This document shows, piece by piece, positions 2,436 through 20,816 of a stretch of DNA of 64,000 nucleotides (positions are counted from its first letter, which is position 1; each line of letters begins with the position of its first letter). The position numbers and the translations under genes are program-made. The notes below the pieces were generated by a model. The model ran no database searches and was not told where the DNA came from. It saw only the letters and a list, made by a program, of their open reading frames with translations. The DNA lies in sequence record LR745208.1, one strand, 5' to 3'.

Positions 2436-2779
2436 TGTACCAGATCCGGCGATTCATGGGCCACCAGGAACACCGTTGTGGGCACACCGTCTGTAACTGC
2501 AAAGGCCTGGACATCTGGGCACCCATCGTGGACCCGCGAACAAGGACCCCGGCTAACTACCACACCCACGGTGAGGCGGTACAGGACCTCCCGGATCTTC
2601 GGTTGGCCGTAGGACTCCAGGAAGGCGTGGAGCCCCGGGATCTTCGGGTGGAGAGGATCGAGTTGGGGCAGGCAGACCCAGACACCCGCCCTGTCAAAGA
2701 ACGTTCGACAAGGACGATTTCTTCCACGGAGGGGCTCAGAGGGGGTAAGGTAGGGGGGAGTCCACTTGACATCCTATAA
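2435..2779 (+). CDS. hypothetical protein
   Basis: TAATG overlap with the upstream gene. Confidence 0.5.
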   Translation: MYQIRRFMGHQEHRCGHTVCNCKGLDIWAPIVDPRTRTPANYHTHGEAVQDLPDLRLAVGLQEGVEPRDLRVERIELGQADPDTRPVKERSTRTISSTEGLRGGKVGGSPLDIL

Positions 2780-2793
2780 CCTGTCACTATACT
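2766..2793 (+). promoter_or_regulatory. sigma70-type promoter of the tRNA-Pro/Ala unit
   Basis: TTGACA-N16-TATACT. Confidence 0.75.
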
Positions 2794-2802
2794 GAACGGA
2801 CC

Positions 2803-2898
2803 ATGAACCTCTCGACCCACAGCACCAACACAGCACCAGCGGCGACAGCCGCTTGCGTGGTGGCGTGCGTGGGTCCAGCCGCCCCGCCCGCAGCCTAA
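2803..2898 (+). CDS. putative Ala/Pro-rich leader peptide MNLSTHSTNTAPAATAACVVACVGPAAPPAA
   Basis: ATG 10 nt after the -10 box. 10 Ala and 4 Pro of 31 codons; directly upstream of tRNA-Pro and tRNA-Ala. Confidence 0.6.
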   Translation: MNLSTHSTNTAPAATAACVVACVGPAAPPAA

Positions 2899-5007: not shown

Positions 5008-5040
5008 ATGAACCAGCATCTGCATCACCACTGTTATTGA
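5008..5040 (+). CDS. putative His/Cys/Tyr leader peptide MNQHLHHHCY
   Basis: ATG AAC CAG CAT CTG CAT CAC CAC TGT TAT TGA, immediately upstream of tRNA-Tyr, tRNA-Cys and tRNA-His. Confidence 0.6.
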   Translation: MNQHLHHHCY

Positions 5041-5073
5041 TCGCGTCGGCTGACGGCCGAGTTTCGCGATATA
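5035..5073 (+). promoter_or_regulatory. leader hairpin overlapping the leader stop codon
   Basis: ATCGCG-TCGGC-(TGACG)-GCCGA-GTTT-CGCGAT. The Tyr codon TAT can pair with ATA at 5071-5073. Confidence 0.6.
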
Positions 5074-5412: not shown

Positions 5413-5417
5413 TTTGG

Positions 5418-5457
5418 GGGCAGGATCCGAAAAGGTTCCGCTGCCCGTTCTCGTTTT
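5418..5457 (+). terminator. possible intrinsic terminator after the tRNA cluster
   Basis: GGGCAG...CTGCCC stem followed by a T-rich stretch. Confidence 0.35.
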
Positions 5458-5494
5458 CCACCTTCTGCTGCCCCCTCATGGTGTAACGTCCTCT

Positions 5495-5701: not shown

Positions 5702-5705
5702 TGCC

Positions 5706-6485: not shown

Positions 6486-6489
6486 GACC

Positions 6490-6741: not shown

Positions 6742-7064
6742 TGCCTAGTGGATACCTAGCCTACCGGGACATGATGGCAGAAATTGATGGGGGCCCCACA
6801 GACAAAGAGGCTCGGGCCAAGCTGTGGTCCGAAAAGGGGATCACCTCACGGGACCTTCGGTGGGAGGGTCCTGAGAATGAGGGTAATGGGACCGTTATCT
6901 TCCAGCATGGGAAGCCTGTGTACTTGATGTGGTATGAGTGGAACATCACCTACGAGAACCTGATGGCATCTTTGCAGAAGGACCTGGGTGGTCTATTCCT
7001 GAAGCTAGTGGACGTGAGGGGTGGAAACGGCCATTATTCGGCTGGTTTGGATGTCATAGGATGA
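6741..7064 (+). CDS. hypothetical protein
   Basis: TGATG coupling. Confidence 0.6.
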   Translation: MPSGYLAYRDMMAEIDGGPTDKEARAKLWSEKGITSRDLRWEGPENEGNGTVIFQHGKPVYLMWYEWNITYENLMASLQKDLGGLFLKLVDVRGGNGHYSAGLDVIG

Positions 7065-7807: not shown

Positions 7808-8010
7808 GAACGCCAGCGGAGGCTTGGGGCCTTACAGAAGACGAGATGGATGATGTCGTTCGTGCAGCATTTGAGCTGCGACCAATGATTCCCCCTACTC
7901 AACACGAACGAGCTCGCATCGCCGAGGCCCTCAAGAAGTATGTTGAAATCAAACAGGGGCATGGGTGGGCTCCGCCGGGTGTGCCCCCGGGAGTAAGGAG
8001 GAGACCATGA
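7804..8010 (+). CDS. hypothetical protein
   Basis: ATGA coupling. Confidence 0.55.
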   Translation: MRTPAEAWGLTEDEMDDVVRAAFELRPMIPPTQHERARIAEALKKYVEIKQGHGWAPPGVPPGVRRRP

Positions 8011-8675
8011 CCCGCAAGCGCACCACCGAGCCGACGATCTTGGAAACCCTAGCCAAGTATCAGGGCCCCTTGTTCAAGTGCAACGTGACGGCTCAACGGT
8101 ATGTTGAGGACGTGACGGTCCTGCTTGCCAGGATTGCGGAACTTGAGGCTGTTCAAACCCAAGAGGTTGCAGAGACCAACGCCCAATTACAGCTGCGTGA
8201 GAATCTGGACGCGGCCTATTTGGAGGAAAATTCCACACGAGACCTACATCTGGACGCCACCCGTCAACAGCGAGCCCTGGACCTACCAGGACGGGTCGCA
8301 GCTATGGAGGACGTCCTGGCACCCTGGCCAGAGCTTCCGCCGACTCCAGAGACCCTTGAGGAGCTCGATGTGGATTACTACACTGCCAACGGGGGCCGCT
8401 CCCATGGTGTGGATGTGAAGCCCCCCACAGAGTCCCTCTGCCCAATCTGTGAGACCCCGTGCAGTCAGGCAAAACCCCATGCCCATGAGATCATTTCCGA
8501 TGAGTCCGGGGAAATCGTATTCATTGACAAGGGCATCCTCGATGAAAACTCCCCCCCGCTCACCCCTGAAACGGTGCGGGTTCTGTTGGCTGAGGGGCGC
8601 GAGATGCGCCGGGTACTGACAGAGCGAGTTGACAAGATGCGAGAACTACCCACAACTGCGAAGGAACCGTGCTGA
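8007..8675 (+). CDS. hypothetical protein (coiled coil plus CPIC motif)
   Basis: 222 aa, coupled, with a ribosome-binding site upstream. Confidence 0.65.
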   Translation: MTRKRTTEPTILETLAKYQGPLFKCNVTAQRYVEDVTVLLARIAELEAVQTQEVAETNAQLQLRENLDAAYLEENSTRDLHLDATRQQRALDLPGRVAAMEDVLAPWPELPPTPETLEELDVDYYTANGGRSHGVDVKPPTESLCPICETPCSQAKPHAHEIISDESGEIVFIDKGILDENSPPLTPETVRVLLAEGREMRRVLTERVDKMRELPTTAKEPC

Positions 8676-9286
8676 TGAAAACCAAGGAACTGGTTCGTCA
8701 ACTTCAGGAACAGGACCCCTCGGGGGAGGAAGAGTGCTGTTGTGGGAACCAAGACATCTTTTTTGTTTCCAAGGACCCAGCTTACTACGACGGCTCCCTT
8801 CAAGTTCTGATTCGGGACCCGGCCAAAGCCCCCTACTACGATGTTGTGGGTGGCAAATATGTGCGAACCGGGTTCAAGATCCAAATCCACACCCTGGGGA
8901 TATCGGACATCCTCGATGATCCCAAGGCAGTCATCGACTACACCGAAGTGGGCCCCGACCTACAGGGGGCATATGCGACTGCGGATGAGACCTCCCGTGA
9001 GGCATACCGGAAAATGCACTGTGACATTGAGAGAGACCTGTTTGTCAGATGGGCACGTGGAGTGGCGGACAAACTGGCAGGGGACATCAGCGAAGTTAAT
9101 GGGTGTGCCCGCAACTTCTTCGACGCCAACCTGTCCCCAATTGACCCCTTCCCGGTGGATCTTGGGGCCATGCTACCCGATGGGACCTACAGGAGTTACA
9201 ATGACCGGCGGTGTGCCCAGTGGTCCCGAGAGATTGAACTGACCTTCGATGGGATGGGTTGGGACTTCAAAAAGAAGGTGCTTTGA
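8675..9286 (+). CDS. hypothetical protein
   Basis: 203 aa, TGATG coupling. Confidence 0.7.
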   Translation: MKTKELVRQLQEQDPSGEEECCCGNQDIFFVSKDPAYYDGSLQVLIRDPAKAPYYDVVGGKYVRTGFKIQIHTLGISDILDDPKAVIDYTEVGPDLQGAYATADETSREAYRKMHCDIERDLFVRWARGVADKLAGDISEVNGCARNFFDANLSPIDPFPVDLGAMLPDGTYRSYNDRRCAQWSREIELTFDGMGWDFKKKVL

Positions 9287-9687
9287 TGCTCCCTACAAGT
9301 GCTTGTGTGGTCCTCATCCGTTACGGGAAGATCGCAGCAATCCGGTCCAGGAAGCACAACGGGGCCATTGAGCTGCCAGGGGGAAAATCAGAGCCCGGAG
9401 AGAAGCCGGAGGAGACCGCAATCCGGGAGTGCATCGAGGAGGTGGGAGTGCACCCCTACTTGGTTCGGTGCCTGCACGTTGAGGAGGATGATGGACATGG
9501 ATACCAGTGCTACGTGTACTTGGCCCGCATCCACGAGGGGGATCTGGAGTCCGGTCCTGAGGGGGAGGCTGTCTGGGTCACCCCTGAGGAACTCTTGACT
9601 GGAACCTATGCCCGTATCTCAGCGAAGTGGCTATCTACGATCAAGGATGAGTTGGGCCAATGGCAGGATCCTCAAGTGGGGGATTGA
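9286..9687 (+). CDS. Nudix hydrolase
   Basis: Nudix box LPGGKSEPGEKPEETAIRECIEEVG. Confidence 0.9.
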   Translation: MLPTSACVVLIRYGKIAAIRSRKHNGAIELPGGKSEPGEKPEETAIRECIEEVGVHPYLVRCLHVEEDDGHGYQCYVYLARIHEGDLESGPEGEAVWVTPEELLTGTYARISAKWLSTIKDELGQWQDPQVGD

Positions 9688-9710
9688 AATGACAATCGAG
9701 ACCGTAGAGG

Positions 9711-10448
9711 TCATTCGACCGATCCAGTTCGGTCCCGCCACCGGGCACTAACCTTGTTGCATTTTCCGATGGGTCGAAAGCTTCTGGCGAGAGGCTTGCC
9801 ATCATGGCAGCAATTGGTCCCGTAGGTCTTAGCTCGCGCAAACACAGCACTCCATGCCTCCCACCCATCGGCACCGTGACATGAATTCGTGGCCTGGATC
9901 TTGTTCCCCTTCACATCCACGACCAGGACGCTGTGAGAAGTGTCGTAAGCGTCCTCCCACTGGAGACTGAGTTCAACCGGGTATCCACGCGCCAACTCCT
10001 GCTTGATTCGGGGAAGGGTACAGGGAACCCGCACGGCTCGAATGCGAAGATGCCTGTGCATCTGGGCAATTCGGTCTTCATTGATGGTGCCATCCTTCAA
10101 GGTGCCCGTGTACCTGACCCACGCCTTGTAGGCCTTGCAGTCCAAGTGCGGGCTGAGCGTGGGTAGTCCCAGGAAAATTGCCGCATTGGTGGCTGTAACC
10201 AGCTGACAATCAGACCACCACTGTGAGTGCTCATGGTGGAAGAGCTTCCCCCCCGACGCCAGGAATCCAACCTCCTGGGAGGAGGAGCTGTAGAGCCGTT
10301 CGACCCGTCCCATCAACGTGTCGTCCAGCCTCCCCAAGCTGTCTAAAGCCAGAGAATCCAGAAATGGGGGCTTGCTGCCCCTGCCCCTGAAGGAACTAAT
10401 GACCTGATTGAGGATCTTGCTCTGGTAGGCCGAGATTTCAACTTGCAT
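9711..10448 (-). CDS. papain-like (peptidase C39-like) cysteine peptidase
   Basis: QWWSDCQLVTATNA (Q..C), HSVLVV and downstream ATNS. Confidence 0.55.
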   Translation of the reverse strand: MQVEISAYQSKILNQVISSFRGRGSKPPFLDSLALDSLGRLDDTLMGRVERLYSSSSQEVGFLASGGKLFHHEHSQWWSDCQLVTATNAAIFLGLPTLSPHLDCKAYKAWVRYTGTLKDGTINEDRIAQMHRHLRIRAVRVPCTLPRIKQELARGYPVELSLQWEDAYDTSHSVLVVDVKGNKIQATNSCHGADGWEAWSAVFARAKTYGTNCCHDGKPLARSFRPIGKCNKVSARWRDRTGSVE

Positions 10449-10461
10449 GGCGAGGCTCCTT

Positions 10462-11106
10462 TCAGGGACGACAGAAACCAGTCTCCTCAACAGCCGGGTT
10501 TGTGCTCAGATGGCAGGTAAAACCAGGGGCACACGTCCGGGCACCCAGGTTGTCCATACAGCAAGGTTGCTGGAGACCCCCGCACAGGTAACATGCTCCG
10601 GCACATGACCCAGGAGAGCACACGGTCCCGTAAAGGTCGCGGTTCATACAGATGGACCCCGCAAGGCAGACGTTGCCTGGACAACAAGGCTGGGCAGTAC
10701 CACTATCCACACGGTAGCCATAGTTGATACCCCCTGCCCCGCAGGTCGTGTTTCGACGGCAGGTGGCACCACCCGCCCCATCGCTTACACAGGTGAGGGC
10801 CGGGCCGCAGACCGGGCTGGTATGACAGCAGGCACCACCCTCGACCCCGCATAGGGGAGCTACATCCGGAGGGGCCACCACATCGGGAGTCACATCCTCT
10901 CCCTGGGGGGCATCGGATACAACATCCGGAGTTACCACATCCTCGGAAGCAACCTCCGAGGCAGCATCTTGAGTGTCTCCCGGAAGCTGGGCGTCCTCAC
11001 GGCCCGTTTCTGTACCGGCATCCTCCGGGGTCCCGGAATCCGCGATCCGGAGTTCCGGAAGCCCACAGGCCATGAGAAGAAATGTAATGAAAACGATGGG
11101 CTTCAT
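10462..11106 (-). CDS. Cys-rich lipoprotein of myxobacterial style
   Basis: Signal peptide with lipobox LLMAC, an acidic D/P/V linker and repeated CG..G..CC modules. Confidence 0.75.
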   Translation of the reverse strand: MKPIVFITFLLMACGLPELRIADSGTPEDAGTETGREDAQLPGDTQDAASEVASEDVVTPDVVSDAPQGEDVTPDVVAPPDVAPLCGVEGGACCHTSPVCGPALTCVSDGAGGATCRRNTTCGAGGINYGYRVDSGTAQPCCPGNVCLAGSICMNRDLYGTVCSPGSCAGACYLCGGLQQPCCMDNLGARTCAPGFTCHLSTNPAVEETGFCRP

Positions 11107-11300
11107 GATTCGTCTCCCAGATTGATGTGGCCTGCCAGCAGGGCATTCTCCAGCCCCATCACCTGCATCTGCCCACACTTGGGGCACTTGTAGCCCTGGG
11201 CATCGGGCTCCACCCCATCCGCCGTGATGTCATCACAGGCTTGGCAATACCCGGCGTAGTTGCCAGATTCCGCCTCGTACTCTTCTTCCGTCATGTTCAT
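11103..11300 (-). CDS. small Zn-ribbon protein
   Basis: CQAC...CPKC; ribosome-binding site GGAG. Confidence 0.7.
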   Translation of the reverse strand: MNMTEEEYEAESGNYAGYCQACDDITADGVEPDAQGYKCPKCGQMQVMGLENALLAGHINLGDES

Positions 11301-11322
11301 GGCTAGGGATCTCCTACACACC

Positions 11323-11350
11323 CTATCGGTATGAGCGAGGGGATCTTTAG
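11323..11350 (-). promoter_or_regulatory. sigma28 (FliA/WhiG)-type promoter
   Basis: CTAAA-N15-ACCGATAG followed by GGTGTGTAGGAG. Confidence 0.6.
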
Positions 11351-11382
11351 CAAAATCGACCCAAAGGTGTAAGGTTGCTGCC

Positions 11383-12000
11383 ATGAAACAATATCCGTCG
11401 ATCTCCAAGGACCACATCCATGGAGTCCCCTTCTACGTCTTCGACAAACTTGATGGCAGCAATTTGCGTGCAGATTTTTCGGCCAAGAAAGGATTCTGGA
11501 AATTCGGCACCCGGACCCGTCTCACGGATCTATCGGATCCTATTGGGAAACTTGCCCTTCCACTGATTCAGGCCCAAGAGGCAGCTTTTGCAGCCCTCTT
11601 CCAATCCCTCCGAGAACGAGAAGCCACCTGTTTCTTCGAGTTCTGGGGCCCCTCTTCGTTTGCCGGAGTCCACGACTACCAGGAAGCGGGGCACCGGGTA
11701 GACCTAATTGACGTGTCGATCCATCGAAGAGGCTTCATGGGGCCCAAGGAATTTGTGAAGACTTTCGAGGGGCATGTTCCAACAGCTCCGCTGCTCTACA
11801 TGGGGAATGTCACCGAGGACCTCACCCAAGCGGTCTGGGACGGAACCCTACCTGGAATGACATTCGAGGGAGTTGTCTGTAAGGGGGCCCCCCTCAAAAA
11901 GGGCTATCCTCCTCACATGTTCAAGCTCAAGAGCCAAGCCTGGATAGCTCGGGTGAAGTCCCTCTACACGGATCCGGCCGTCTTGGCAGAACTCCTGTAG
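11383..12000 (+). CDS. RNA ligase-family (Rnl2-like) nucleotidyltransferase
   Basis: Motif I KLDGSN, FFEFWG, LIDV, EGVVCK and FKLKS. Confidence 0.75.
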   Translation: MKQYPSISKDHIHGVPFYVFDKLDGSNLRADFSAKKGFWKFGTRTRLTDLSDPIGKLALPLIQAQEAAFAALFQSLREREATCFFEFWGPSSFAGVHDYQEAGHRVDLIDVSIHRRGFMGPKEFVKTFEGHVPTAPLLYMGNVTEDLTQAVWDGTLPGMTFEGVVCKGAPLKKGYPPHMFKLKSQAWIARVKSLYTDPAVLAELL

Positions 12001-12095
12001 ACCCGTTTCCAGGAGAAAAGATACAGTGTGTCCCAGGTTGCCACACTTGGCGGTATTCGCCCGATGGTACACCCAATATCAGGGGGTACACGAAC

Positions 12096-12296
12096 ATGGC
12101 GCCAACTCTAGACATTTTCGACTACTGCACAGGTTGTGGGATCTCACCAACCGTTGGAAGCACCCGACTTTGCTACGATTGCCTGGACCCGAAGCATCCT
12201 GACCAGCCTAGCGTGGCTCCACCCCCTAACAATGACGAGCGGAACTGGGAAGTCCTGGATGAGTATCTCCAGATTGTTCCCCTCGAAAATCCCTAG
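12096..12296 (+). CDS. small hypothetical Zn-binding protein
   Basis: CTGC...CYDC; ribosome-binding site upstream. Confidence 0.5.
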   Translation: MAPTLDIFDYCTGCGISPTVGSTRLCYDCLDPKHPDQPSVAPPPNNDERNWEVLDEYLQIVPLENP

Positions 12297-12313
12297 CTTG
12301 GGGTAAAAGGGGA

Positions 12314-12613
12314 ATGACAGCCAAGACCCCGCCAATTGAAGAGCCCCATTCCTTCCAAATCCAGCAGCTCCATCTCGTGATAGCGGTGGATGGCCGAAAA
12401 TGGGAATACCGGCACAAGAACGGTATGGCTCAAGTCGGCCAAGTGGGTCATCACCCACAGGACGAAGTCACCGAACTAGGAAAAGCTGTGCTCACCATGA
12501 GCATTGAGGAACTGTTGAAGGCAGTTACCCAAATGAAGCGTCAGTTTGAAGCTGGCGTTCCGCCTGTCGATGGCCTAGCGATGTTCCGGGCCGCGGGGCT
12601 TGAAATTGAGTAA
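12314..12613 (+). CDS. hypothetical protein
   Basis: 99 aa, with a ribosome-binding site. Confidence 0.6.
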   Translation: MTAKTPPIEEPHSFQIQQLHLVIAVDGRKWEYRHKNGMAQVGQVGHHPQDEVTELGKAVLTMSIEELLKAVTQMKRQFEAGVPPVDGLAMFRAAGLEIE

Positions 12614-12620
12614 TCAGGCC

Positions 12621-13070
12621 ATGAAATCCAAAAGTGACCCGAATTGGGCCGTCTACAAGACCGTTCCTGCCCTCCCCAAAATCCCCCTCAGCACAACGGC
12701 CAATAGGGTCACTGAGGCAGCCAATTTGCTCCGTGGGGTTGGTGAGACGGTAGAGGGATTGGGCCATGATGCATCCCAATGGAGATCCCTACGACCTGAA
12801 GTTCAGGTGTTTGCCCAATTGATGGAACGGAAGCTTCGAGCTAACGACCACAAGGATGGATGGAAGGAATGCAGCCCTGTAGAACTCTTCAAGAGAGTCC
12901 AAGAGGAGATGGAAGAGTTCCGGCTGGCTTTTGAAAACCCCAACACCCTAGGAGAGGTTGCCCTCCGTAATTCCCCGGCGGCGATTGCCTGGGAGGGGAT
13001 CGATGTGGCCAATATGATACTCATGGTCATCGATGTGATGGGTATACTCACCCCTACCCTGAAGGGTTAG
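12621..13070 (+). CDS. MazG-like all-alpha NTP pyrophosphohydrolase-domain protein
   Basis: RVQEEMEEF...EGIDVAN (EExxE...ExxD) pattern. Confidence 0.55.
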   Translation: MKSKSDPNWAVYKTVPALPKIPLSTTANRVTEAANLLRGVGETVEGLGHDASQWRSLRPEVQVFAQLMERKLRANDHKDGWKECSPVELFKRVQEEMEEFRLAFENPNTLGEVALRNSPAAIAWEGIDVANMILMVIDVMGILTPTLKG

Positions 13071-13076
13071 CGATGA

Positions 13077-13673
13077 ATGAATGACAAGGACGACAAGGTA
13101 GAGGCCCTCCTCCAGAAGTACAACATCCCCAACCCACGTTGTAGGGCCTACGTGGGAGATGGCTGGGTTCCCCTTGTGGATCAGCTGTTCGCTGACATGA
13201 TTGCTCTGGGATGGGACCGGGACCTACACCAGCTGAAGGAAAAATTCGGCGGTCTCAGGGTGTATATTGGCGTGTCCTCCGCAAGCGTCAAGGAGCGCAT
13301 TCGGGTAGCGGAAGAGGTCGCTGCCCGTACCTGTGATGAATGTGGCGCTCCAGGCGAGATCCTGGAATCCCCTCGGGGTTGGTGGACGTGCTGGTGCAAA
13401 GGCTGTTATGCCAAGAGCCTCACCAAGTATATCGAGGAGTGCAAGGTGGATCTGGCCGAGACCTTGGTGAGTATTGAGAAGAACAAGAAGACTATCTCAG
13501 ACGCCTTCTGGTCTTCCACGATTTCTGCTGTTATCACAGGGGATCAGGCAGACCTGACCTCCCTGGAGAAGGCTCAGAAAAACCTCAGTCGCGACACTTC
13601 GTGTGCCCAAGAGATGCAAAAGGACATTGACGCCTGTGAGAAGTACCTGAAGGAGATTCAGCCCGATGAGTAA
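13077..13673 (+). CDS. conserved phage hypothetical protein
   Basis: QLKEKFGGLR motif, CDECG Zn site and a C-terminal coiled coil. Confidence 0.7.
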   Translation: MNDKDDKVEALLQKYNIPNPRCRAYVGDGWVPLVDQLFADMIALGWDRDLHQLKEKFGGLRVYIGVSSASVKERIRVAEEVAARTCDECGAPGEILESPRGWWTCWCKGCYAKSLTKYIEECKVDLAETLVSIEKNKKTISDAFWSSTISAVITGDQADLTSLEKAQKNLSRDTSCAQEMQKDIDACEKYLKEIQPDE

Positions 13674-13977
13674 TCCCAGGAGTCTATCCAAATCCCAAAT
13701 TGGGCTGCTAGCCATGATGGGAATGAGCGTGGAAATGAGGAAGTCCTATGCACGGGCATTGGTGTATAATTCTGTGCTGTTGGCCACTGACAAACGATTC
13801 AACCATTGGGCGACAGTCGAACACCAGGACGGTTCTAGGTTCGTTCTCGCCTGCGCCTTTTTGATTACTGATCCTGAAGACGATGGGTACCTGTGGTTGA
13901 TGGCTGAGCATTCAGGGGTTCACGTTTTCTGTAAGGAAGACCTCGCCCACTGGCGTGAATTCAAGAGGATAGGATGA
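13666..13977 (+). CDS. hypothetical protein
   Basis: 103 aa, overlapping coupling. Confidence 0.6.
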   Translation: MSNPRSLSKSQIGLLAMMGMSVEMRKSYARALVYNSVLLATDKRFNHWATVEHQDGSRFVLACAFLITDPEDDGYLWLMAEHSGVHVFCKEDLAHWREFKRIG

Positions 13978-14342
13978 GGGAACTCAAAAACAAGCTGCCC
14001 GAGAATGTGAAGCGGGACATCCCTATCGATTTGGTGGGGGTCCGAGAGTCCCGAAAGTTCTCTTCAGGCAAGGTACAAGGGCCCGATGATCCGGCCCGTC
14101 ACTGGCTTCGCTCATTGAATGAGATTACTCGTCCTTGGGAGATCAAGGACCAGTCCCTAATCGAACAGGAGCGGGCCTTCGCAAGGCACCAGTTCAACCT
14201 TGGCCTCCGAGATGTGGTGCTCGAAACAGCCGTGGCCATGGAGCAGGCCCGACGCCGGGGAACAGACTCCCAGAAGACGTACACCCGGGGAGCCTTTGAG
14301 AAGGCCCTGGCTGACTTCATGGTGGCCCTGGAGATCGAATAG
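13974..14342 (+). CDS. hypothetical protein
   Basis: 122 aa, ATGA coupling. Confidence 0.6.
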   Translation: MRELKNKLPENVKRDIPIDLVGVRESRKFSSGKVQGPDDPARHWLRSLNEITRPWEIKDQSLIEQERAFARHQFNLGLRDVVLETAVAMEQARRRGTDSQKTYTRGAFEKALADFMVALEIE

Positions 14343-14354
14343 TACAGCCACCCC

Positions 14355-14383
14355 TTGACACCTCGGTAATTCGTCTTTAGACT
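14355..14383 (+). promoter_or_regulatory. sigma70-type promoter of the Leu tRNA array
   Basis: TTGACA-N17-TAGACT. Confidence 0.8.
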
Positions 14384-14395
14384 ACACAGGACACC

Positions 14396-14485
14396 ATGTT
14401 CGATCGTGCAACCAACTCCATTCCGAGCCTGAAGCTAGAGCTATTGCTTAGCTGTGCCGGGGTGGATTTATGCACTCGTGCGTAG
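14396..14485 (+). CDS. putative Leu leader peptide MFDRATNSIPSLKLELLLSCAGVDLCTRA
   Basis: AGGA upstream. Leu codons CTG, CTA, CTA, TTG, CTT and TTA; precedes five Leu tRNAs. Confidence 0.65.
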   Translation: MFDRATNSIPSLKLELLLSCAGVDLCTRA

Positions 14486-14517
14486 GTCTGAGGTCCCCGG
14501 CAGCAAGTAGGTAGCTT
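14432..14517 (+). promoter_or_regulatory. long imperfect leader hairpin
   Basis: AAGCTA/TAGCTT, TTGCT/AGCAA, GCCGGGG/CCCCGGC and an 11-bp apical stem (14464-14474 with 14479-14489, including G-U pairs). It ends 1 nt before the first tRNA. Confidence 0.7.
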
Positions 14518-14605
14518 GGCCGGGTGATGGAATTTTGGAAGACATGCTGGTCTCAGAAGCCAGTGGGAGTAACTTCCCGTGAGGGTTCGATGCCCTTCCC
14601 GGCCA
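14518..14605 (+). tRNA. tRNA-Leu(CAG)
   Basis: Acceptor GGCCGGG/CCCGGCC, loop CT-CAG-AA, long variable arm, A73. Confidence 0.93.
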
Positions 14606-14609
14606 CTCT

Positions 14610-14691
14610 GCATGAGTGGTGTAACTGGTAGCCACGTAGGAATGAGAGTCCTATGTCGAAAGACGTGCAGGTTCGATCCCTGTCTCATGCA
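14610..14691 (+). tRNA. tRNA-Leu(GAG)
   Basis: Acceptor GCATGAG/CTCATGC, loop AT-GAG-AG, variable arm GTC-GAAA-GAC. Confidence 0.88.
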
Positions 14692-14710
14692 CTGTTTCTT
14701 TAATGTTTTC

Positions 14711-14795
14711 GCGAGGATGGCGGAATTGGCAGACGCGCCGGACTTAGGATCCGGTACCGCAAGGTGTAGGGGTTCAAGTCCCCTTTCTCGCACCA
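14711..14795 (+). tRNA. tRNA-Leu(UAG)
   Basis: Canonical fold, loop CT-TAG-GA, encoded CCA. Confidence 0.97.
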
Positions 14796-14837
14796 ACAGC
14801 TGGAAGTAGGTGAAGACTAAAACAACAATGATTTCCT

Positions 14838-14919
14838 GGGTTATTGGTGAAATTGGCAGCCACGCACCATTCAAAATGGTGTCCCGCAAGGGGTATCGGT
14901 TCAAGTCCGTTATAACCCA
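14838..14919 (+). tRNA. tRNA-Leu(CAA)
   Basis: Acceptor GGGTTAT/ATAACCC, loop TT-CAA-AA. Confidence 0.92.
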
Positions 14920-14923
14920 CTAC

Positions 14924-15006
14924 GGCCCTGTGATGGAATTGGCAGACATTCTCCCACTTAAAACGGGAGGCCGCGAGGCATCCGGGTTCAAGTCCCGGTA
15001 GGGCCA
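14924..15006 (+). tRNA. tRNA-Leu(UAA)
   Basis: Acceptor GGCCCTG/TAGGGCC. Anticodon arm CTCCC-A-CTTAAAA-C-GGGAG carries an extra A/C pair. Confidence 0.85.
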
Positions 15007-15635
15007 CCTATATTTTTTCCACAGTACGTGGGAGTCTGTGAGTGGCAGTTGGGGCACAGTAACCTCAGGTTTTCCAGGCGATGGTCCGTGGGGACCCCAT
15101 TCTTGTGGTCTAGGTGCAAGGAAATTGGCTTCCCCTTCCATGTGGTCAAAAGGCAGTCCGGGTCAGAGCATTCATATCTTAGTACTCCCTCTTTGACAAG
15201 ACGTTTACTAAGGTGGTTGGTCCCATAGGTGCTATTCTCAACCAATAACTCTGACAATGGCATCTTAACTGACCACGAGTGGGTTTTCCCCTTCAAGTGT
15301 CCCTGTCCTGTCCAGTGCGTGGTACTCAAACCCAACCGGAGAATATGTTGCCGAATGGTCTTGTAGTTCCCCCCAACAGGGGACAACCCCAATTCCCTTA
15401 AGACCATGGCCATGGTAAATTGGGTAGCCACGGCCCGTGTGAGTTGTTCCTCTGACCATTTCTTGAAGTGTACCGCCCAATGCTCGGACTTTAACCCTAA
15501 GCGCCCCATATGCGTTTGGATAGTCTTCGCATTACTGCTATTGGGGTAAAGCCCCAATTCCCTCAGCACCTCTGACATGGAAAACTTCGTGGTTACGGCC
15601 TGAATTAGCTGAGTGTCGGTCCATGTTCTTGACAT
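14988..15635 (-). CDS. HNH (homing-type) endonuclease
   Basis: Two N-terminal W..EQL..AV...LRELGL repeats and C-terminal LDHKNG...NLRLLCPNCH. Confidence 0.9.
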   Translation of the reverse strand: MSRTWTDTQLIQAVTTKFSMSEVLRELGLYPNSSNAKTIQTHMGRLGLKSEHWAVHFKKWSEEQLTRAVATQFTMAMVLRELGLSPVGGNYKTIRQHILRLGLSTTHWTGQGHLKGKTHSWSVKMPLSELLVENSTYGTNHLSKRLVKEGVLRYECSDPDCLLTTWKGKPISLHLDHKNGVPTDHRLENLRLLCPNCHSQTPTYCGKNIGGPTGT

Positions 15636-15724
15636 TTTGCCTCCGGTGGGGCTTGGTCAATGGGCAGCCTCTACCGAAGGGCTATCAATTGGCTAACTAG
15701 CGGATTCACCAGCTCATCAAACGG

Positions 15725-16852
15725 CTACTTCAACTTGGCCATGAATTCAACAATCTCGTTTGGCAGGGGCATTCCTAAGACCAGATGGGCGAAGGCTTCG
15801 GCGAAGTTTTCGGTCCATTTGGTGGCTCCATAGGGTGTGACGGCAATGGGTTCCCGTAGGACCTTGCCAGTCATGAGGGTCACGTCCTTCTTGCCAGCAA
15901 TGCCTTCGTGGAGTTCCTTCTCATCGATCTTCCCGGAGAGGAACTCAGTGGTGAGTTGCCGGGCCTCTCGGGGACCGTCAGGGGACTTCAACCACATGAC
16001 CAGTTCTGGGGACATGGGGACCATGGGCTTACCTAGTCCGCGGGCCTTGGTGAGCGACACTACCTCATCAGCCATCCGATTGCGTAAGTCCTTGTCGAAC
16101 AGCACTTCCTCGTAGACCGTGCGGGTGGACAGGTCAAAAAACTCTCGGGTCAGCTCTGCGCTGAGGAACCGGTGTTGGTACCGGTGCCCCAGTTCATGAG
16201 CTATTGTGTGGACATCCCCAAACCTAGATTGGGCGTTCACACTTACATAGAACTGATCTCCAGAGGGGGTATACCAAGCCGCTGATTTGCTATTCAGGTG
16301 TGTGGAAAGGTGTACCTTACCATACAGAACCTCAGGGAAGACCCTCTGGATTTTTCCAGTTGCCTCATCGAGAGCTTTGAGGGCCCCCTCAATTTTTGAG
16401 ACTGGGACTCCTGGCATCGGGACGATCTCGAAAGGTCCCCGTTTGATGATCCGGTCTTCATCCGTTGCTGCACTGGCAATTTCCAAGGTGCGTAGGGGTT
16501 TGGCCCAGGTCTCGAACCTTCTGATCCAAACGGATTGGAACATGTCCGAATTGAGGATCCCATGACGCATGTCCAAGAATTCACGGACATCCTTCTGGAG
16601 GGCATTGATTGCATTGCGCTTGGCGGTTCCAAGGGCCAAGTACCAATCCGCAGGTACTGGCGCCCCAAAATCCCCAGTGGTCCTATCAGTTGGGAAGATC
16701 AGGCTCAGAACGGTCTTCCCAAACTTCGCCATAGGGTCCATATCCTTCTTCTCGAAGGCTTCCTGGGCTTTCTTGAAGTCTGGGAGGAGGGATACCCCTT
16801 TGGCTTGGAGGAACCGGGAGGCTACCCGGTCGGCTTGGGGAACTTGGGACAT
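15725..16852 (-). CDS. zincin metallopeptidase (anthrax lethal factor-like), probably virion-associated
   Basis: HELGH plus TPYGATKWTENFAEAF; N-terminal DRVASRFL motif. Confidence 0.65.
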   Translation of the reverse strand: MSQVPQADRVASRFLQAKGVSLLPDFKKAQEAFEKKDMDPMAKFGKTVLSLIFPTDRTTGDFGAPVPADWYLALGTAKRNAINALQKDVREFLDMRHGILNSDMFQSVWIRRFETWAKPLRTLEIASAATDEDRIIKRGPFEIVPMPGVPVSKIEGALKALDEATGKIQRVFPEVLYGKVHLSTHLNSKSAAWYTPSGDQFYVSVNAQSRFGDVHTIAHELGHRYQHRFLSAELTREFFDLSTRTVYEEVLFDKDLRNRMADEVVSLTKARGLGKPMVPMSPELVMWLKSPDGPREARQLTTEFLSGKIDEKELHEGIAGKKDVTLMTGKVLREPIAVTPYGATKWTENFAEAFAHLVLGMPLPNEIVEFMAKLK

Positions 16853-16884
16853 GTCATTCTGGTAGGGGGATAGAAGCGTTAGGC

Positions 16885-17139
16885 TCAGTTCCGTTCCCGC
16901 CTCAGTGCCTCCTCGGCATCTTGGATAAGCCCATCGAGCTTGTCCGTAAACTCCTTGCCCCGTGTAGCAATGGTATTCTCTAGGATGTCCGCCATGGCAT
17001 GGGCTTCTGGTCCACAGTGGGTACACCAATAAATCTTGGCTCCTGGCTCCACGTCACTGAAGTCCATTGTGTACCGCTCGTCCGGGACTCCTAAGCAACC
17101 TGGATTCCCATAGTCACGACAGACAATCTCGATTGTCAT
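16885..17139 (-). CDS. hypothetical protein
   Basis: 84 aa from the ATGA overlap. Confidence 0.6.
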   Translation of the reverse strand: MTIEIVCRDYGNPGCLGVPDERYTMDFSDVEPGAKIYWCTHCGPEAHAMADILENTIATRGKEFTDKLDGLIQDAEEALRRERN

Positions 17140-17654
17140 GTGGCCAACCGGTAGGTCTCTGAGAATTCCCTGGCAGCGATCCGATAGACTTCCCCCTTCT
17201 GTGGGAGAGGAGTGCAGAGCATGTCCCCCGGCTTGAGAGCCATGGGCTCTCCCCAGGATGCCATGAACTGGACCTCTCGACCATTGTACTTGACGGCACG
17301 GCACTTACCTGTAGCTTGGTAATGACACCATGTCTGGACGACTCCGGTACCCAAGTCGGGTTTTTCCCATGGAAACTTAGTGACCTCATAGGTGGACCCA
17401 TGGATTCTCGTGTATCGGGCATGAAGCTTTTCCCCGCCGAGCAAATAGAGTTCCTGTGCCCCCGTGGAGTTGCGGACCACATAGTCATCCCCTTTGGCGG
17501 TATTGGTAGTCTCCACACCATCGGAGGTTTCGGTGATAATGACCTCCCCGGGAGTGGCCCGTCTAGCTTCCACGATTGTGAACTTCTGGTAATCCTCTCC
17601 TTTGATATCAATCAGAGGCAGGAAGGTATCCAAGGTCTCTTGTTGGGTCATCAT
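17136..17654 (-). CDS. PGDYG-like domain protein
   Basis: Duplicated AKGDDYVV / KPGDML modules; FMASWGE and EFSETY motifs. Confidence 0.6.
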   Translation of the reverse strand: MMTQQETLDTFLPLIDIKGEDYQKFTIVEARRATPGEVIITETSDGVETTNTAKGDDYVVRNSTGAQELYLLGGEKLHARYTRIHGSTYEVTKFPWEKPDLGTGVVQTWCHYQATGKCRAVKYNGREVQFMASWGEPMALKPGDMLCTPLPQKGEVYRIAAREFSETYRLAT

Positions 17655-18388
17655 AGGGCATCCCTCAGGTAGCGTTGGACCTTCATTCTATCCAACTGGT
17701 CATTGGTTCTCAAGCACCCCTCCGCATCAATGTTGACCTCGGGGAACCGGGCGCGGATGGGATGGATCAGGTGAAGAGTTTCCTGGCAGAGACCGCCAGC
17801 CACACCCAGCCCAATGTTCGGGGACCGTTCTGCAATGGCCTCTAGGTACCTCAAACACAGGTCGGTATCTAGAGGAACCCCTTTCCCACCACTGCCATCA
17901 ACCAGTACATCCGTAATGGCATCCCCGTAGTCGGCCACCCGCTTGGCGGTCTCTGTATAGCCCCCACCTACCCTCATGGCCCGCGGTCCAATTTGTAGGA
18001 CTATTCGGTCCCCCAGACGAGATCCATCTTTGATCGCCTTGGCATTCGGCCAAACCATATTGAGTTGGAACCCGTGAACAAATCCACGCCATCCCAGGAT
18101 GTCCCGAATCTGACGCATGGAAGATGTCAGCTGTCCCTGACCCTCATCCCCAGTTGAAAAATGAATGAGCCTGAGTTCCCGAGGGTCTGCGTCCAGCGGG
18201 GCAATGAGTGGCAGCTCCCCAATGATAGGGAACCGGTTTGGGTACTTGTTTGTCTCTCCCCTGAGAGTCTTGGAGCTAGCTAGCAATCCTACCATGAGTA
18301 GGTGACTTGATTCCTGGGGCATATTGTCAAGAGCTTCCAGGACTTGTTCCCGGGACATAAATGCGGTGACTCCTACGTATGGTTTCAT
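17651..18388 (-). CDS. phosphoribosylanthranilate isomerase (TrpF)-like TIM barrel
   Basis: VLVDGSGGKG, GVAGGL and NIDAEG motifs. Confidence 0.55.
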   Translation of the reverse strand: MKPYVGVTAFMSREQVLEALDNMPQESSHLLMVGLLASSKTLRGETNKYPNRFPIIGELPLIAPLDADPRELRLIHFSTGDEGQGQLTSSMRQIRDILGWRGFVHGFQLNMVWPNAKAIKDGSRLGDRIVLQIGPRAMRVGGGYTETAKRVADYGDAITDVLVDGSGGKGVPLDTDLCLRYLEAIAERSPNIGLGVAGGLCQETLHLIHPIRARFPEVNIDAEGCLRTNDQLDRMKVQRYLRDAL

Positions 18389-18390
18389 AG

Positions 18391-18723
18391 CTAGTTGTAC
18401 ACCGCCGCAAGGTACCAGCCGACTTTGGCGTCCTGAATTCCGAATTCCTTGAGGAGGAATTCCTTCAAGTCACGCACCCTATCTGGATAGTGGCCCAAAG
18501 CGAGGATCTCAACGGGGTCCTCTACCTCTGCTACCGTGGTCTCTTCAATTGAGATGGCATCCCCCATCTCCCCATGGCAGTAACCATAATAGGTCCAGAT
18601 GAACCCTGCTGCCCTAATCTTCGCAATGGTCTGATCGAACTTCTCTTCCATCTCCGGGGCCCTGAGGACTCCGGTAGGGAGGATTGACCCCAGGAAGAAT
18701 TTGGCGTAAGAATTGTCACTCAT
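18391..18723 (-). CDS. hypothetical protein
   Basis: 110 aa, coupled. Confidence 0.65.
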   Translation of the reverse strand: MSDNSYAKFFLGSILPTGVLRAPEMEEKFDQTIAKIRAAGFIWTYYGYCHGEMGDAISIEETTVAEVEDPVEILALGHYPDRVRDLKEFLLKEFGIQDAKVGWYLAAVYN

Positions 18724-19150
18724 GGCTAAACCTTTCCTCTATCCGATGCAGTCGGTTCTCGTCCAGTTTCCAAGTGTGCCTGAGGGAATGGAGTGCTCGC
18801 CGAAGAAAACCTGTATGGTCAACTACCCCTTTGGCATGATAGGTTATGGACAAAACCCCGGTTAGCACATTGGGAGCTAAGCGATCTGTATCTAGGGCGT
18901 CCAGTAGGTTTCGTGCCCGGTAGAGGTTGCCAACCAATAGAAGCCTGTCAAGTCGATCTACCAGCCTGTCAACAGCAGCAATTGGCTTATTGGCACTGTC
19001 CAGGTAACATTGGGCCAGAAGGGTGGCGTCGGTTTCTTGACCCATGGGGTCGTCCTCCCCTCCTTCCCCCCAACTGCTCATACCAATGTGGAGAGGTTCC
19101 CAATCATCATCCCCATTGTCATCCCAATCACCACCCATGCCGATACTCAT
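18716..19150 (-). CDS. hypothetical protein with acidic N-terminus
   Basis: 144 aa, ATGA coupling. Confidence 0.6.
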   Translation of the reverse strand: MSIGMGGDWDDNGDDDWEPLHIGMSSWGEGGEDDPMGQETDATLLAQCYLDSANKPIAAVDRLVDRLDRLLLVGNLYRARNLLDALDTDRLAPNVLTGVLSITYHAKGVVDHTGFLRRALHSLRHTWKLDENRLHRIEERFSHE

Positions 19151-19545
19151 TGTCCCACCCCATCTGGAATCCGAACTGTCATCTCCCCCTCACCGTGGCA
19201 TTTCGCACAGGGGATGAAAAGCTGCTTGTCTCTCCAACAGACAAAGGCAAAAACCTTCGCGTAAGCAGTCAGTCCAGCTAGGTTCATGCCTTGCTCTTGA
19301 AGACATTGTGGGGGGTAGCTTCGGGTGGGATCAAGATGATTGAGTACCATCCCCTGAATGCTCTTGTCCCTCAGGTACTTCCCGTATTGGTCGGCATGCC
19401 TGTTGGCCCGACGCAGCCACTTCTTGAGGCGCCTTCTTGGCACATGGCGTCTGAATGCTCCCTTGCCTTTGCACCAGGGGCATTCCACAATGTCACCATC
19501 GTAGACGTAGCCCTCAAGCCTATCCTCAGTGTCCTCAATATCCAC
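19147..19545 (-). CDS. hypothetical Zn-finger protein
   Basis: CPWCKGKG and CAKCHGEG (DnaJ-like Cys motifs). Confidence 0.6.
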   Translation of the reverse strand: MDIEDTEDRLEGYVYDGDIVECPWCKGKGAFRRHVPRRRLKKWLRRANRHADQYGKYLRDKSIQGMVLNHLDPTRSYPPQCLQEQGMNLAGLTAYAKVFAFVCWRDKQLFIPCAKCHGEGEMTVRIPDGVGQ

Positions 19546-19963
19546 GGTGACTGTCCTTCAATTCTGAAGCACTCACATACAAGGCACCCAGGCGTTCTAG
19601 CTCCCCAATGACAGCGAGGCGATCTTCCTCAGTGATGCTGGACCAACGGCACTTCTGACGTTCAGGATGGGGGCCATCGTTCTTGGTGACGTAGAAGAAG
19701 AACATGGCCAGGACTTGACCCACCCCATGCTCCACATTCAGAACCGCATCTTTAGGTGCAGCATTGGCCCCCCCTGCAAGCCCAATATTCCTGGCCTCCA
19801 CGAACTCAATGATCGGGTCCAGAAACCCTCCCTCATAGTCGGATAGTTCCATAGGCATGTACCCAGCCACCGTGAACCCCAACTCCAGGTACTCCTGAAT
19901 GCGCCATTTCTTACGGATACGACGTTTCTTGTGGGTAAGCTTGCGATGCTTGTCAGGTACCAT
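19535..19963 (-). CDS. yggL: YggL (DUF469)-family 50S ribosome-binding protein
   Basis: KKRRIRKKWRIQEYLELGF N-terminus, FLD..IEFVE and SITEEDR..V motifs. Confidence 0.65.
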   Translation of the reverse strand: MVPDKHRKLTHKKRRIRKKWRIQEYLELGFTVAGYMPMELSDYEGGFLDPIIEFVEARNIGLAGGANAAPKDAVLNVEHGVGQVLAMFFFYVTKNDGPHPERQKCRWSSITEEDRLAVIGELERLGALYVSASELKDSHRGY

Positions 19964-19967
19964 GGGG

Positions 19968-20816
19968 CTACTCGATTTCTAGGACTCGGATGGACAGGTG
20001 CGGTGACCCATAAACGGACTTCCCCGTCAGGCACTTCAGGTTAGGACCGTAGTCCTGCTCCCATGCCGTGTGGGTGTGCCCGGAGAGGCAGAGAAACTTG
20101 GTCTCGGGGAAGTCCTGGGCCGTGAGCTTGAGGGCATCCCCGGCCCTCCTGGAGGCCATTACAGGGAGCCAAGAGTGCTCGGGACTCATGGACCCGTCCG
20201 GGCTCCGGGAGTTCTCTCGGAAGGGGGGGACATGGGTGGCAAATAGGACATGCGGGAACCCAGCCTTGGCGGCTGCCACAACATGCTCGTCAATATGGTC
20301 AGCGGCTTGTTGGGACAGGTCATTCATGAGCTTGTGCATCAGAAGGGGGGGCTGAAACCGGAAGTCTGCAATCAAATCGTAGTCCCCGATCTTCAGATTG
20401 GGGAGGGATCGGAACCAGTTGGCGTATCCACCATCATACCAGCCATCATGGCCTACCAATGCGGTCTTGTCGGTCAGCTTGACTACGCCCATCTTGTTGA
20501 GCCAGCAAGTACGGGTCATTGTCCCGTCATACTTGTCAACCATGGCCCTAACTGACAGAATGGAGCCAGAATAAAAATCGTGGTTCCCCAAAACGAAAAA
20601 CACCTTAATGCCCGGCAAATACATCTCCAACCACATGAGGTGAATCTCTAGGGAGGACGCCTGTGAGATGTCGCCAGTGATTACCACGCAGTCTGGCTTG
20701 GTGGCCATGACCTTAGCACAGAATGCCTGGACCTTGGACTCAGAGATGAACCTCTCGTTCCCCACAAGGTCAAACACCAAATCAAGGTGAATATCTGTGC
20801 ACCAAGTGATCCTCAC
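19968..20816 (-). CDS. calcineurin-like metallophosphoesterase
   Basis: TDIH, GDIS, GNHD, THVPP and GHTH motifs. Confidence 0.88.
   Translation of the reverse strand: MRITWCTDIHLDLVFDLVGNERFISESKVQAFCAKVMATKPDCVVITGDISQASSLEIHLMWLEMYLPGIKVFFVLGNHDFYSGSILSVRAMVDKYDGTMTRTCWLNKMGVVKLTDKTALVGHDGWYDGGYANWFRSLPNLKIGDYDLIADFRFQPPLLMHKLMNDLSQQAADHIDEHVVAAAKAGFPHVLFATHVPPFRENSRSPDGSMSPEHSWLPVMASRRAGDALKLTAQDFPETKFLCLSGHTHTAWEQDYGPNLKCLTGKSVYGSPHLSIRVLEIE

What the first reader, a model, noticed from the sequence alone, without database searches (positions are those of the whole stretch)
14432..14517. Leader hairpin ends exactly at the tRNA 5' end and has no U-tract
Seen: an 86-nt imperfect hairpin has the Leu codons in its 5' arm and the stop codon near the apex, and its last paired base (14517) is adjacent to tRNA position 1 (14518). 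The Tyr leader hairpin ends similarly (5073 versus 5075). Neither is followed by poly-U, so they are not classical intrinsic terminators. Established: RNase P prefers a single-stranded 5' leader. Inference: control may act on tRNA processing, RNA stability or Rho access, with a stalled ribosome holding the stem open.
Basis: partly seen in the sequence, partly recalled or inferred. Interest (0 to 1): 0.68.

Follow-up and report, generated by a model that had tools for sequence, protein, structure and literature searches.

The report
Ribosome-sensing hairpin gating phage tRNA-Leu operon
A very stable RNA hairpin with no U-tract sits between a short Leu-codon-rich reading frame and five tRNA-Leu genes of a 485-kb groundwater phage, and most likely lets the phage adjust production of its own tRNAs to how well ribosomes are being supplied with them, a kind of control not described for tRNA genes.

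Summary
Window 14438-14517 folds into an 80-nt hairpin (-40.9 kcal/mol, z -4.3; none of 400 random windows is as stable). Its last pair abuts tRNA-Leu(CAG) +1, the stop codon lies just past the apex, and no U-tract follows. The Tyr hairpin is ordinary and ends 4 nt short.

The context is larger than the finding. The window comes from LR745208, a 485-kb Rifle groundwater phage. Seven of its tRNA runs follow a short ORF enriched in codons for exactly the tRNAs downstream; six of these have a sigma70-like promoter match. The Leu leader carries one codon for each of the five isoacceptors.

Related jumbo phages, including the cultured Tunturi_5, have the same kind of leaders, but theirs are followed by canonical antiterminator/terminator sets just before the first tRNA. 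LR745208 shows no excess of hairpin-plus-U terminators anywhere in its genome.

Best reading: the hairpin is the 'off' element of a ribosome-mediated attenuator, and a hungry ribosome on the 5' arm keeps it open. Because each leader senses every tRNA of its operon, control is probably operon-wide, at transcription. RNase P gating of the first tRNA alone fits less well. How the hairpin acts is not shown: there is no RNA data and no orthologue for covariation. I found no prior description.

The parts
14355..14383 (+). sigma70-like promoter of the tRNA-Leu operon (TTGACA, 17 nt, TAGACT)
   Evidence: 10 of 12 consensus matches. It and the Pro/Ala promoter are the two best + strand matches in window 1-20000.
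14396..14485 (+). 29-codon leader ORF with six Leu codons (CTG, CTA, CTA, TTG, CTT, TTA), at least one for each of the five downstream isoacceptors; stop TAG at 14483-14485
   Evidence: Sequence and codon list. The probability that 6 Leu codons drawn at genome usage cover all five decoding classes is 0.017. The start context ACC-ATG is the genome norm.
14438..14517 (+). 80-nt imperfect hairpin: lower stem 14438-14453 with 14500-14517, upper stem 14456-14474 with 14479-14499, loop 14475-14478; no U-tract follows
   Evidence: dG -40.9 kcal/mol, z -4.3. 0 of 400 random windows are as stable. No Rfam family matches.
14518..14606 (+). tRNA-Leu(CAG), first gene of the operon; its +1 base abuts the hairpin
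   Evidence: ARAGORN; Rfam tRNA 42.2 bits.
14610..15008 (+). tRNA-Leu(GAG), (UAG), (CAA) and (UAA), separated by spacers of 3-42 nt
15013..15018 (+). T6 run 4 nt after the last tRNA-Leu; possible end of the operon
   Evidence: Sequence.
5008..5040 (+). 10-codon leader ORF (MNQHLHHHCY) upstream of tRNA-Tyr, -Cys and -His
   Evidence: 6 of 10 residues are cognate; empirical p = 8e-4.
5040..5070 (+). Tyr-leader hairpin, starting at the stop codon and ending 4 nt before tRNA-Tyr (5075); not unusually stable
2766..2898 (+). Promoter (2766-2793; 11 of 12 matches) and 31-codon leader ORF (2803-2898) with 10 Ala and 4 Pro codons, upstream of tRNA-Pro and tRNA-Ala

Best explanation
The hairpin is the ribosome-sensitive 'off' element of a leader-peptide attenuator that controls the whole five-gene tRNA-Leu operon.

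A sigma70-type promoter starts a transcript with a very short 5' UTR. A 29-codon ORF is translated, and it holds one codon for each Leu isoacceptor the operon encodes. If any of those charged tRNAs is scarce, the ribosome stalls at or in the foot of the 5' arm. The long stem then cannot close, and the operon is expressed, which gives negative feedback on tRNA supply. If supply is good, the ribosome runs to the stop codon at the apex and leaves. The stem then closes right up to tRNA +1 and shuts the operon down.

The shut-down most likely acts on transcription elongation into the tRNA genes. It would be a non-canonical stop without a U-tract: hairpin-induced pausing or termination, possibly helped by Rho or Nus factors.

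Shown: the promoter match, the ORF, the codon content, the hairpin and its geometry, and canonical attenuators in relatives. Inferred: that the ORF is translated, the direction of regulation, and what the closed hairpin does.
For: (1) The hairpin is real and exceptional.

(2) Seven tRNA runs of the same genome follow short ORFs enriched in the cognate amino acids. Per-leader empirical p for six of them is 8e-4 to 4e-2, and the cognate set scores highest in every row of a cross-assignment matrix, with one tie. The seventh is a Gln leader with 8 Gln among its last 12 codons.

(3) Codons match the anticodons downstream, including tRNAs that are not first in the operon. This requires operon-wide control.

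(4) The Leu, Glu/Asp and Thr leaders share one architecture: control codons in the 5' arm, the stop at or near the apex, and the 3' arm ending 0-2 nt before the tRNA. The Gln leader has the same architecture plus a U5 tail.

(5) Relatives have cognate leaders followed by strong hairpin-plus-U terminators just before the first tRNA (within 13 nt of it in three of the five), with an antiterminator strand at the end of the ORF. These are Tunturi_5, G004 and G008. The antiterminator, terminator 5' arm and 3' arm differ in sequence between Tunturi_5 and G008 but stay complementary. In one case (G008, Asn/Ala/Phe/Pro/Gln leader) a ribosome at the stop masks the antiterminator while a stalled one does not.

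(6) LR745208 has no excess of hairpin-plus-U terminators genome-wide: 52 against 49 controls. The relatives show a 2-5 fold excess, except G008. Its strongest intergenic hairpins also lack U tails.

(7) The leader ORFs share the genome's usual start context.
Against: There is no RNA data; only DNA runs hold this phage. No orthologue of the Leu leader exists, so covariation cannot be tested.

I found no mutually exclusive antiterminator. The G-rich tRNA 5' end after the stem would give a strong RNA:DNA hybrid, which by E. coli rules argues against intrinsic termination.

A single hairpin with the stop at its apex raises a timing problem. A ribosome at the stop also blocks the stem while the polymerase passes, so discrimination would need a downstream pause, which is not shown.

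Four of the seven leaders (Arg/Gly, Pro/Ala, Tyr, Gln) have hairpins of ordinary stability. Some tRNA runs (Ser, Met; Lys/Val/Arg and Ile doubtful) lack a convincing cognate leader.
Confidence: 0.5

Rival explanations
1. RNase P gating. The closed stem, stacked directly on the acceptor stem, hides the 5' leader from RNase P. A stalled ribosome frees 14500-14517, so that tRNA-Leu(CAG) is matured only when Leu-tRNA is short.
For: The stem ends exactly at -1. With the A site at codons 14-18, the 3' arm base becomes unpaired. Pairing that extends the acceptor stem into the leader inhibits bacterial RNase P (PMC9433436, found). The mechanism does not depend on timing, which suits a single-hairpin design.
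Against: It can regulate only the first tRNA. Yet 5 of 6 Leu control codons are for tRNAs 2-5, and the Tyr, Arg/Gly, Pro/Ala and Glu/Asp leaders are rich in codons for later tRNAs. In Pro/Ala and Arg/Gly the last 10 leader nt are no more paired than random. Relatives use transcription terminators at this position.
Confidence: 0.2
2. Rho-dependent attenuation. The C-rich, G-poor 5' part of the leader is a Rho loading site. It is exposed once ribosomes have terminated and is covered by stalled or queued ribosomes when Leu-tRNA is scarce. The hairpin provides the pause at which Rho catches the polymerase.
For: All nine promoter-proximal leader starts have C>G: mean (C-G)/length is about 0.18, against a background of 0.01 with sd 0.13. 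There is no U-tract, and canonical terminators are not enriched in this genome. Precedents from my own knowledge, not tested here, are tnaC and mgtL.
Against: The C-rich stretch is only 40-50 nt. The 3' arm next to the stop is G-rich. A 37-bp stem is a poor track for Rho. The C>G bias is equally explained by an unstructured translation start and by the choice of Thr/His/Pro/Asn codons.
Confidence: 0.15
3. The hairpin is a processing or stability element, or only an insulator. It might be an RNase III site that separates the leader from the tRNAs, or a self-contained fold that keeps the leader from disturbing tRNA folding. In either case it would have no regulatory switch.
For: A long near-perfect duplex is a plausible RNase III substrate. 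Other strong U-less hairpins occur in intergenic DNA of this phage.
Against: It does not explain why the control codons lie in the 5' arm with the stop at the apex in three independent leaders. It also does not explain why the ORFs match their tRNAs. Cleavage when the stem is closed would give more tRNA when supply is already good.
Confidence: 0.1

Closest known systems
Ribosome-mediated transcription attenuators of amino-acid operons and of pheST (trpL, hisL, leuL, thrL, pheM)
   Same: A promoter-proximal short ORF carries a cluster of codons cognate to the regulated function. The control codons lie in the 5' arm of a hairpin with the stop near its apex, as in the trp 1:2 hairpin. Ribosome position decides RNA folding. 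The pheM-pheST case shows that translation-apparatus genes can be controlled this way (my own knowledge).
   Different: The regulated genes are tRNAs, not enzymes. The codons cover each isoacceptor encoded downstream. In LR745208 I found no U-tract terminator and no separate antiterminator strand. The element is phage-borne and repeated for at least seven operons.
Canonical leader-peptide attenuators upstream of tRNA runs in related jumbo phages (Tunturi_5 PP885688.1, IMG/VR G004 and G008), found here
   Same: The position is the same (promoter, cognate-codon ORF, hairpin just before the first tRNA) and so is the principle. The phages are related, with helicases about 54-55% identical.
   Different: The relatives have a three-strand antiterminator/terminator arrangement with a clear U-tract. 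Their leaders mix codons for many amino acids. LR745208 has one long stem that abuts the tRNA, no U-tract, and tRNAs sorted by amino acid.
Single-hairpin occlusion attenuators (pyrBI, pyrE) and stalled-ribosome hairpin opening (ermC, cat)
   Same: The ORF runs into the regulatory hairpin, and a ribosome sitting on the 5' arm prevents the hairpin from forming.
   Different: The pyr signal is polymerase speed (UTP). The erm/cat signal is a drug, and the output is exposure of an SD sequence. Here the signal would be supply of charged tRNA and the output tRNA genes.
T-box riboswitches
   Same: They tie expression of translation-related genes to the charging state of a specific tRNA.
   Different: T-boxes bind uncharged tRNA directly and need no ribosome. 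No T-box or any other Rfam family matches here.

Membership tests
Leader-peptide (ribosome-mediated) transcription attenuator | Short translatable ORF between the promoter and the regulated genes | tested here: met
   ORF 14396-14485 starts 12 nt after the -10 hexamer and has the genome-typical ACC-ATG context. Translation itself is not shown.
Leader-peptide (ribosome-mediated) transcription attenuator | Cluster of codons cognate to the regulated product | tested here: met
   Six Leu codons cover all five isoacceptors (p = 0.017). Six further leaders match their own tRNAs.
Leader-peptide (ribosome-mediated) transcription attenuator | Intrinsic terminator (hairpin plus U-tract) before the regulated genes | tested here: not met
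   The stem is followed by the G-rich tRNA 5' end and the scan finds no terminator. The feature is met in the relatives.
Leader-peptide (ribosome-mediated) transcription attenuator | Mutually exclusive antiterminator pairing | tested here: inconclusive
   Constrained folds show only partial melting and no convincing alternative helix. Leader-tRNA pairing is no better than for non-cognate pairs. Clear antiterminators exist in the relatives.
Canonical intrinsic (Rho-independent) terminator | GC-rich stem immediately followed by a U-rich tract | tested here: not met
   The stem is present and the U-tract is absent. Genome-wide there is no excess of such sites.
Rho-dependent attenuator (tna or mgtA type) | C-rich unstructured rut site whose access depends on ribosome position, plus Rho dependence | not testable with these tools
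   Only a C>G bias in the 5' 40 nt of the leaders could be shown.
Rfam leader, T-box or other described RNA families | Covariance-model match | tested here: not met
   Only tRNA hits reach gathering score. In 14340-14530 at E up to 10 there is only one noise hit.
RNase P substrate gating by leader structure | Cleavage rate depends on whether the leader is paired | not testable with these tools
   The geometry is compatible, and the literature supports inhibition by leader pairing (PMC9433436).

The most novel reading that the evidence does not exclude
Huge phages run a direct feedback loop from decoding to tRNA supply. Each tRNA operon is preceded by a mini-ORF that samples exactly the codons its tRNAs read. 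In LR745208 this works through a single hairpin without a terminator that abuts the tRNA, a mechanism distinct from classical attenuation (pause, factor-dependent stop or processing gate). Such a loop would let the phage top up tRNAs that the host lacks or destroys, for example through anticodon nucleases.
Probability: 0.5. Interest if true: 0.9.

Novelty: new variant of a known kind. Interest (0 to 1): 0.8.

Why it matters
Phage tRNA genes are usually treated as constitutive cargo that corrects codon bias or replaces tRNAs cut by host defences. A leader peptide that reads the very codons served by the downstream tRNAs would make their expression demand-driven. As far as I could find, leader-peptide attenuation has not been described for tRNA genes in any organism.

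Related phages use textbook terminators, while LR745208 uses a hairpin without a U-tract in a genome that lacks U-tract terminators. This offers a natural comparison for asking how attenuation is rebuilt when the host's termination rules differ.

A cultured relative, Tunturi_5 on Tunturiibacter, makes the principle directly testable.

Tried and rejected
- Orthologues for covariation. The upstream 122-aa protein found nothing in viral contigs, and only identical copies in metagenome contigs. A tRNA 5' pattern gave nothing. A terminator/tRNA pattern shared by Tunturi_5 and G008 gave only G008 plus chance hits. No covariation test of the Leu stem was therefore possible.
- Expression. Only DNA runs hold the phage. 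Contigs laid from four runs were identical across the leader, and the other matches were host-like tRNA-Leu fragments.
- 'The leader sequesters the tRNA acceptor strand'. The MFE extends the stem into the tRNA. A 7x7 swap control shows cognate pairs are no better than non-cognate ones (ddG -2.5 against -3.1). Rejected as unsupported.
- 'The leader is a decayed tRNA copy'. Local alignments to all 36 tRNAs do not exceed shuffles. Rejected.
- Adjacency of the stem to the tRNA as evidence on its own. 39% of random windows end paired, so it is not significant alone.
- Equilibrium folding to read the switch logic in relatives. The terminator always wins at equilibrium. Truncated folds were needed, and they resolve the logic clearly in only one case.
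- G002, a distant 435-kb relative, shows no convincing cognate leaders.
- Literature searches for leader-peptide control of tRNA genes found nothing. The Tunturi paper and Al-Shayeb 2020 do not mention it.

Full report
WHAT THE WINDOW IS

The window is identical to LR745208.1, an uncultured 485,034-bp phage. In the supplement of Al-Shayeb et al. 2020 it is listed as GWB1_PHAGE_COMPLETE_CIR-CU-CL_55_23, from Rifle groundwater. Its gene-taxonomy profile is led by Spirochaetes at about 10%. I fetched the near-identical IMG/VR record G001 in full. It carries 36 tRNA genes, most of them grouped in runs sorted by amino acid.

THE OBSERVATION

The fold of 14432-14517 pairs 14438-14517: dG -40.9 kcal/mol, z -4.3, and no shuffle as good.
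- Lower stem: 14438-14453 with 14500-14517.
- Upper stem: 14456-14474 with 14479-14499.
- Loop: 14475-14478.

tRNA-Leu(CAG) starts at 14518 by both ARAGORN and Rfam. What follows the stem is the G-rich acceptor strand, not a U-tract. None of 400 random 80-nt windows of the genome is as stable.

Adjacency on its own is weak evidence, because 39% of random windows end paired. High stability combined with adjacency occurs in 4% of random windows, but in 3 of 7 leaders.

The Tyr hairpin (5040-5070) is ordinary in stability and stops 4 nt before tRNA-Tyr. The 'similar' claim is therefore only loosely true.

THE CONTEXT CHANGES THE QUESTION

A sigma70-like promoter (14355-14383, 10 of 12 matches) is followed 12 nt later by a 29-codon ORF (14396-14485). 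The ORF contains CTG, CTA, CTA, TTG, CTT and TTA. That is one or more codons for each of the five Leu isoacceptors encoded immediately downstream: CAG, GAG, UAG, CAA and UAA. At this genome's codon usage, six Leu codons cover all five classes with probability 0.017.

The same pattern recurs across the genome.
- The Tyr/Cys/His run follows MNQHLHHHCY (window 5008-5040).
- Pro/Ala follows an ORF with 10 Ala and 4 Pro among 31 residues (2803-2898).
- Outside the window, Glu/Asp/Glu, Arg x3 with Gly x2, and Thr x3 each follow a promoter and a cognate-rich ORF.
- An ORF ending in 8 Gln among its last 12 codons lies between tRNA-Phe and two tRNA-Gln genes.

Against about 1,300-1,800 size-matched short ORFs of the genome, each leader's cognate fraction has empirical p between 8e-4 and 4e-2. 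In a cross-assignment matrix the cognate set is the best in every row, with one tie.

The two promoters in the window are the two best + strand consensus matches in 20 kb. The leader start context (ACC-ATG with a weak SD) is the genome's norm.

The leaders are not decayed tRNA copies and match no Rfam family.

RELATIVES

The nearest cultured relative by helicase (55% identity) is the jumbo phage Tunturi_5, which infects an acidobacterium. Its first tRNA run is Leu, Cys, Leu, Leu, followed after one ORF by Tyr, Leu and Ser x3. This run follows an ORF with 15 consecutive Leu/Cys/Ser/Tyr residues. After the ORF comes a canonical terminator, an 11-pair stem with a U-rich tail, ending a few nt before the tRNA.

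IMG/VR relatives found with a helicase alignment show the same arrangement.
- G008 has an orthologous Leu/Ser/Cys/Tyr leader and an Asn/Ala/Pro/Gln/Gly one.
- G004 has a Val/Gly/Ala/Cys/Asp leader and a Lys/Arg/His/Gln/Asn one.
- Each is followed by a strong hairpin-plus-U terminator.

Truncated folds show that a strand at the end of each ORF pairs with the terminator's 5' arm, forming an antiterminator. In one case a ribosome at the stop masks this strand while a stalled ribosome does not, which is the classical logic. Between Tunturi_5 and G008 the three strands differ in sequence but keep their complementarity. The two peptides share composition rather than sequence.

Leader-peptide attenuation of tRNA operons is therefore a conserved trait of this phage group. 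Neither the Tunturi paper, nor Al-Shayeb 2020, nor five full-text searches mention such control.

WHY LR745208 DIFFERS

Genome-wide, stems of 7 or more pairs followed by a T-rich tail number 52, against 49 for an A-tail control. The tRNA regions of the relatives show a 2-5 fold excess, except G008. The strongest intergenic hairpins of LR745208 also lack U tails.

The absence of a U-tract is thus a property of the whole genome, and probably of its host's termination rules. It is not specific to the leaders, so it does not exclude a transcriptional role.

Within LR745208 the Leu, Glu/Asp and Thr leaders share one architecture: control codons in the 5' arm, the stop at or just past the apex, and the 3' arm ending 0-2 nt before the tRNA. 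The Gln leader has the same design with a U5 tail. A weak His leader (5256-5303) has its stop in the loop of a GC hairpin.

MECHANISM

Constrained folds show what a ribosome does at each position.
- With its A site on the central Leu codons, it frees the lower stem and the 18 nt next to the tRNA.
- At the stop, it melts the upper stem.

The decisive argument between the models comes from codon content. Every leader carries codons for all tRNAs of its operon. In the Leu leader, five of six control codons serve tRNAs 2-5. His codons dominate the Tyr leader. Gly, Ala and Asp codons appear for later genes. A gate on RNase P cleavage at the first tRNA cannot use that information, whereas an operon-wide gate can. 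Together with the canonical terminators at the same place in relatives, this favours control of transcription into the operon.

How a stem without a U-tract stops or delays the polymerase is open. It could be a hairpin-stabilised pause, a factor-assisted stop, or Rho. The leader 5' parts are uniformly C>G, but the stretch is short and that bias has other explanations. A single-stem design also has a timing problem, stated under evidence against.

RNase P gating remains physically sensible for the first tRNA (PMC9433436) and may act in addition.

NOT SUPPORTED

The idea that the leader captures the acceptor strand failed a swap control.

LIMITS

There are no RNA reads and no orthologue of this stem, so there is no covariation test. 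Translation, the direction of regulation and the action of the closed stem are all inferred.

Noticed in passing
window 2766-2898 and 5008-5040: The two other tRNA operons in the window (Pro-Ala and Tyr-Cys-His) also follow short ORFs rich in exactly the cognate codons. The Pro/Ala promoter matches 11 of 12 consensus positions.
   Followed up: yes
G001 reverse strand: 399105-399161, 408142-408252, 429869-429925, 431604-431747: Outside the window there are four more cognate leaders: Glu/Asp, Arg/Gly and Thr, plus a Gln leader that sits between tRNA-Phe and two tRNA-Gln genes. The Gln leader ends in a hairpin with a U5 tail. Five leader-like ORFs begin with Met-Asn.
   Followed up: yes
window 5256-5318: A 15-codon ORF with two His codons and ACC-ATG context lies between tRNA-Cys and tRNA-His. 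Its stop codon sits in the loop of an 8-pair GC hairpin (5293-5318), which is followed by a U-rich spacer. It may be a weak internal His leader.
   Followed up: partly
window 3025, 5238, 14693: The U-rich motif TGTTTC follows directly after tRNA-Pro and tRNA-Leu(GAG), and two bases after tRNA-Cys. After tRNA-Pro it is repeated. These could be partial terminators that use the tRNA stem, or RNase E sites. A T6 run follows the last tRNA-Leu (15013-15018).
   Followed up: no
L062 (PP885688.1 230000-257000) 1157-1315 and about 9220-9380; G008 and G004 loci L077-L087: The cultured jumbo phage Tunturi_5 and IMG/VR relatives carry canonical leader-peptide attenuators (cognate ORF, antiterminator, hairpin-plus-U terminator) in front of tRNA runs. 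These are not annotated or discussed in the source paper.
   Followed up: yes
whole G001 genome: There is no excess of hairpin-plus-U terminators (52 against 49 controls). SD use is weak (29% of ORF starts against 15% at random positions), and C is preferred at -1 and -2 of start codons.
   Followed up: partly
G001 reverse strand 397204-397278 and 262501-262577: ARAGORN calls one tRNA with a four-base anticodon (ttta) and one suppressor-type tRNA with anticodon tta (which would read UAA). I saw no sign of recoding in the ORFs I read.
   Followed up: no
window 44286-55214: A single 3,642-codon ORF lies on the + strand next to a DNA helicase gene (42481-44241). I did not examine it.
   Followed up: no
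G001 reverse strand 298324-298370: A 22-pair perfect hairpin lies in intergenic DNA. It is the longest perfect stem in the genome and has no U tail.
   Followed up: no
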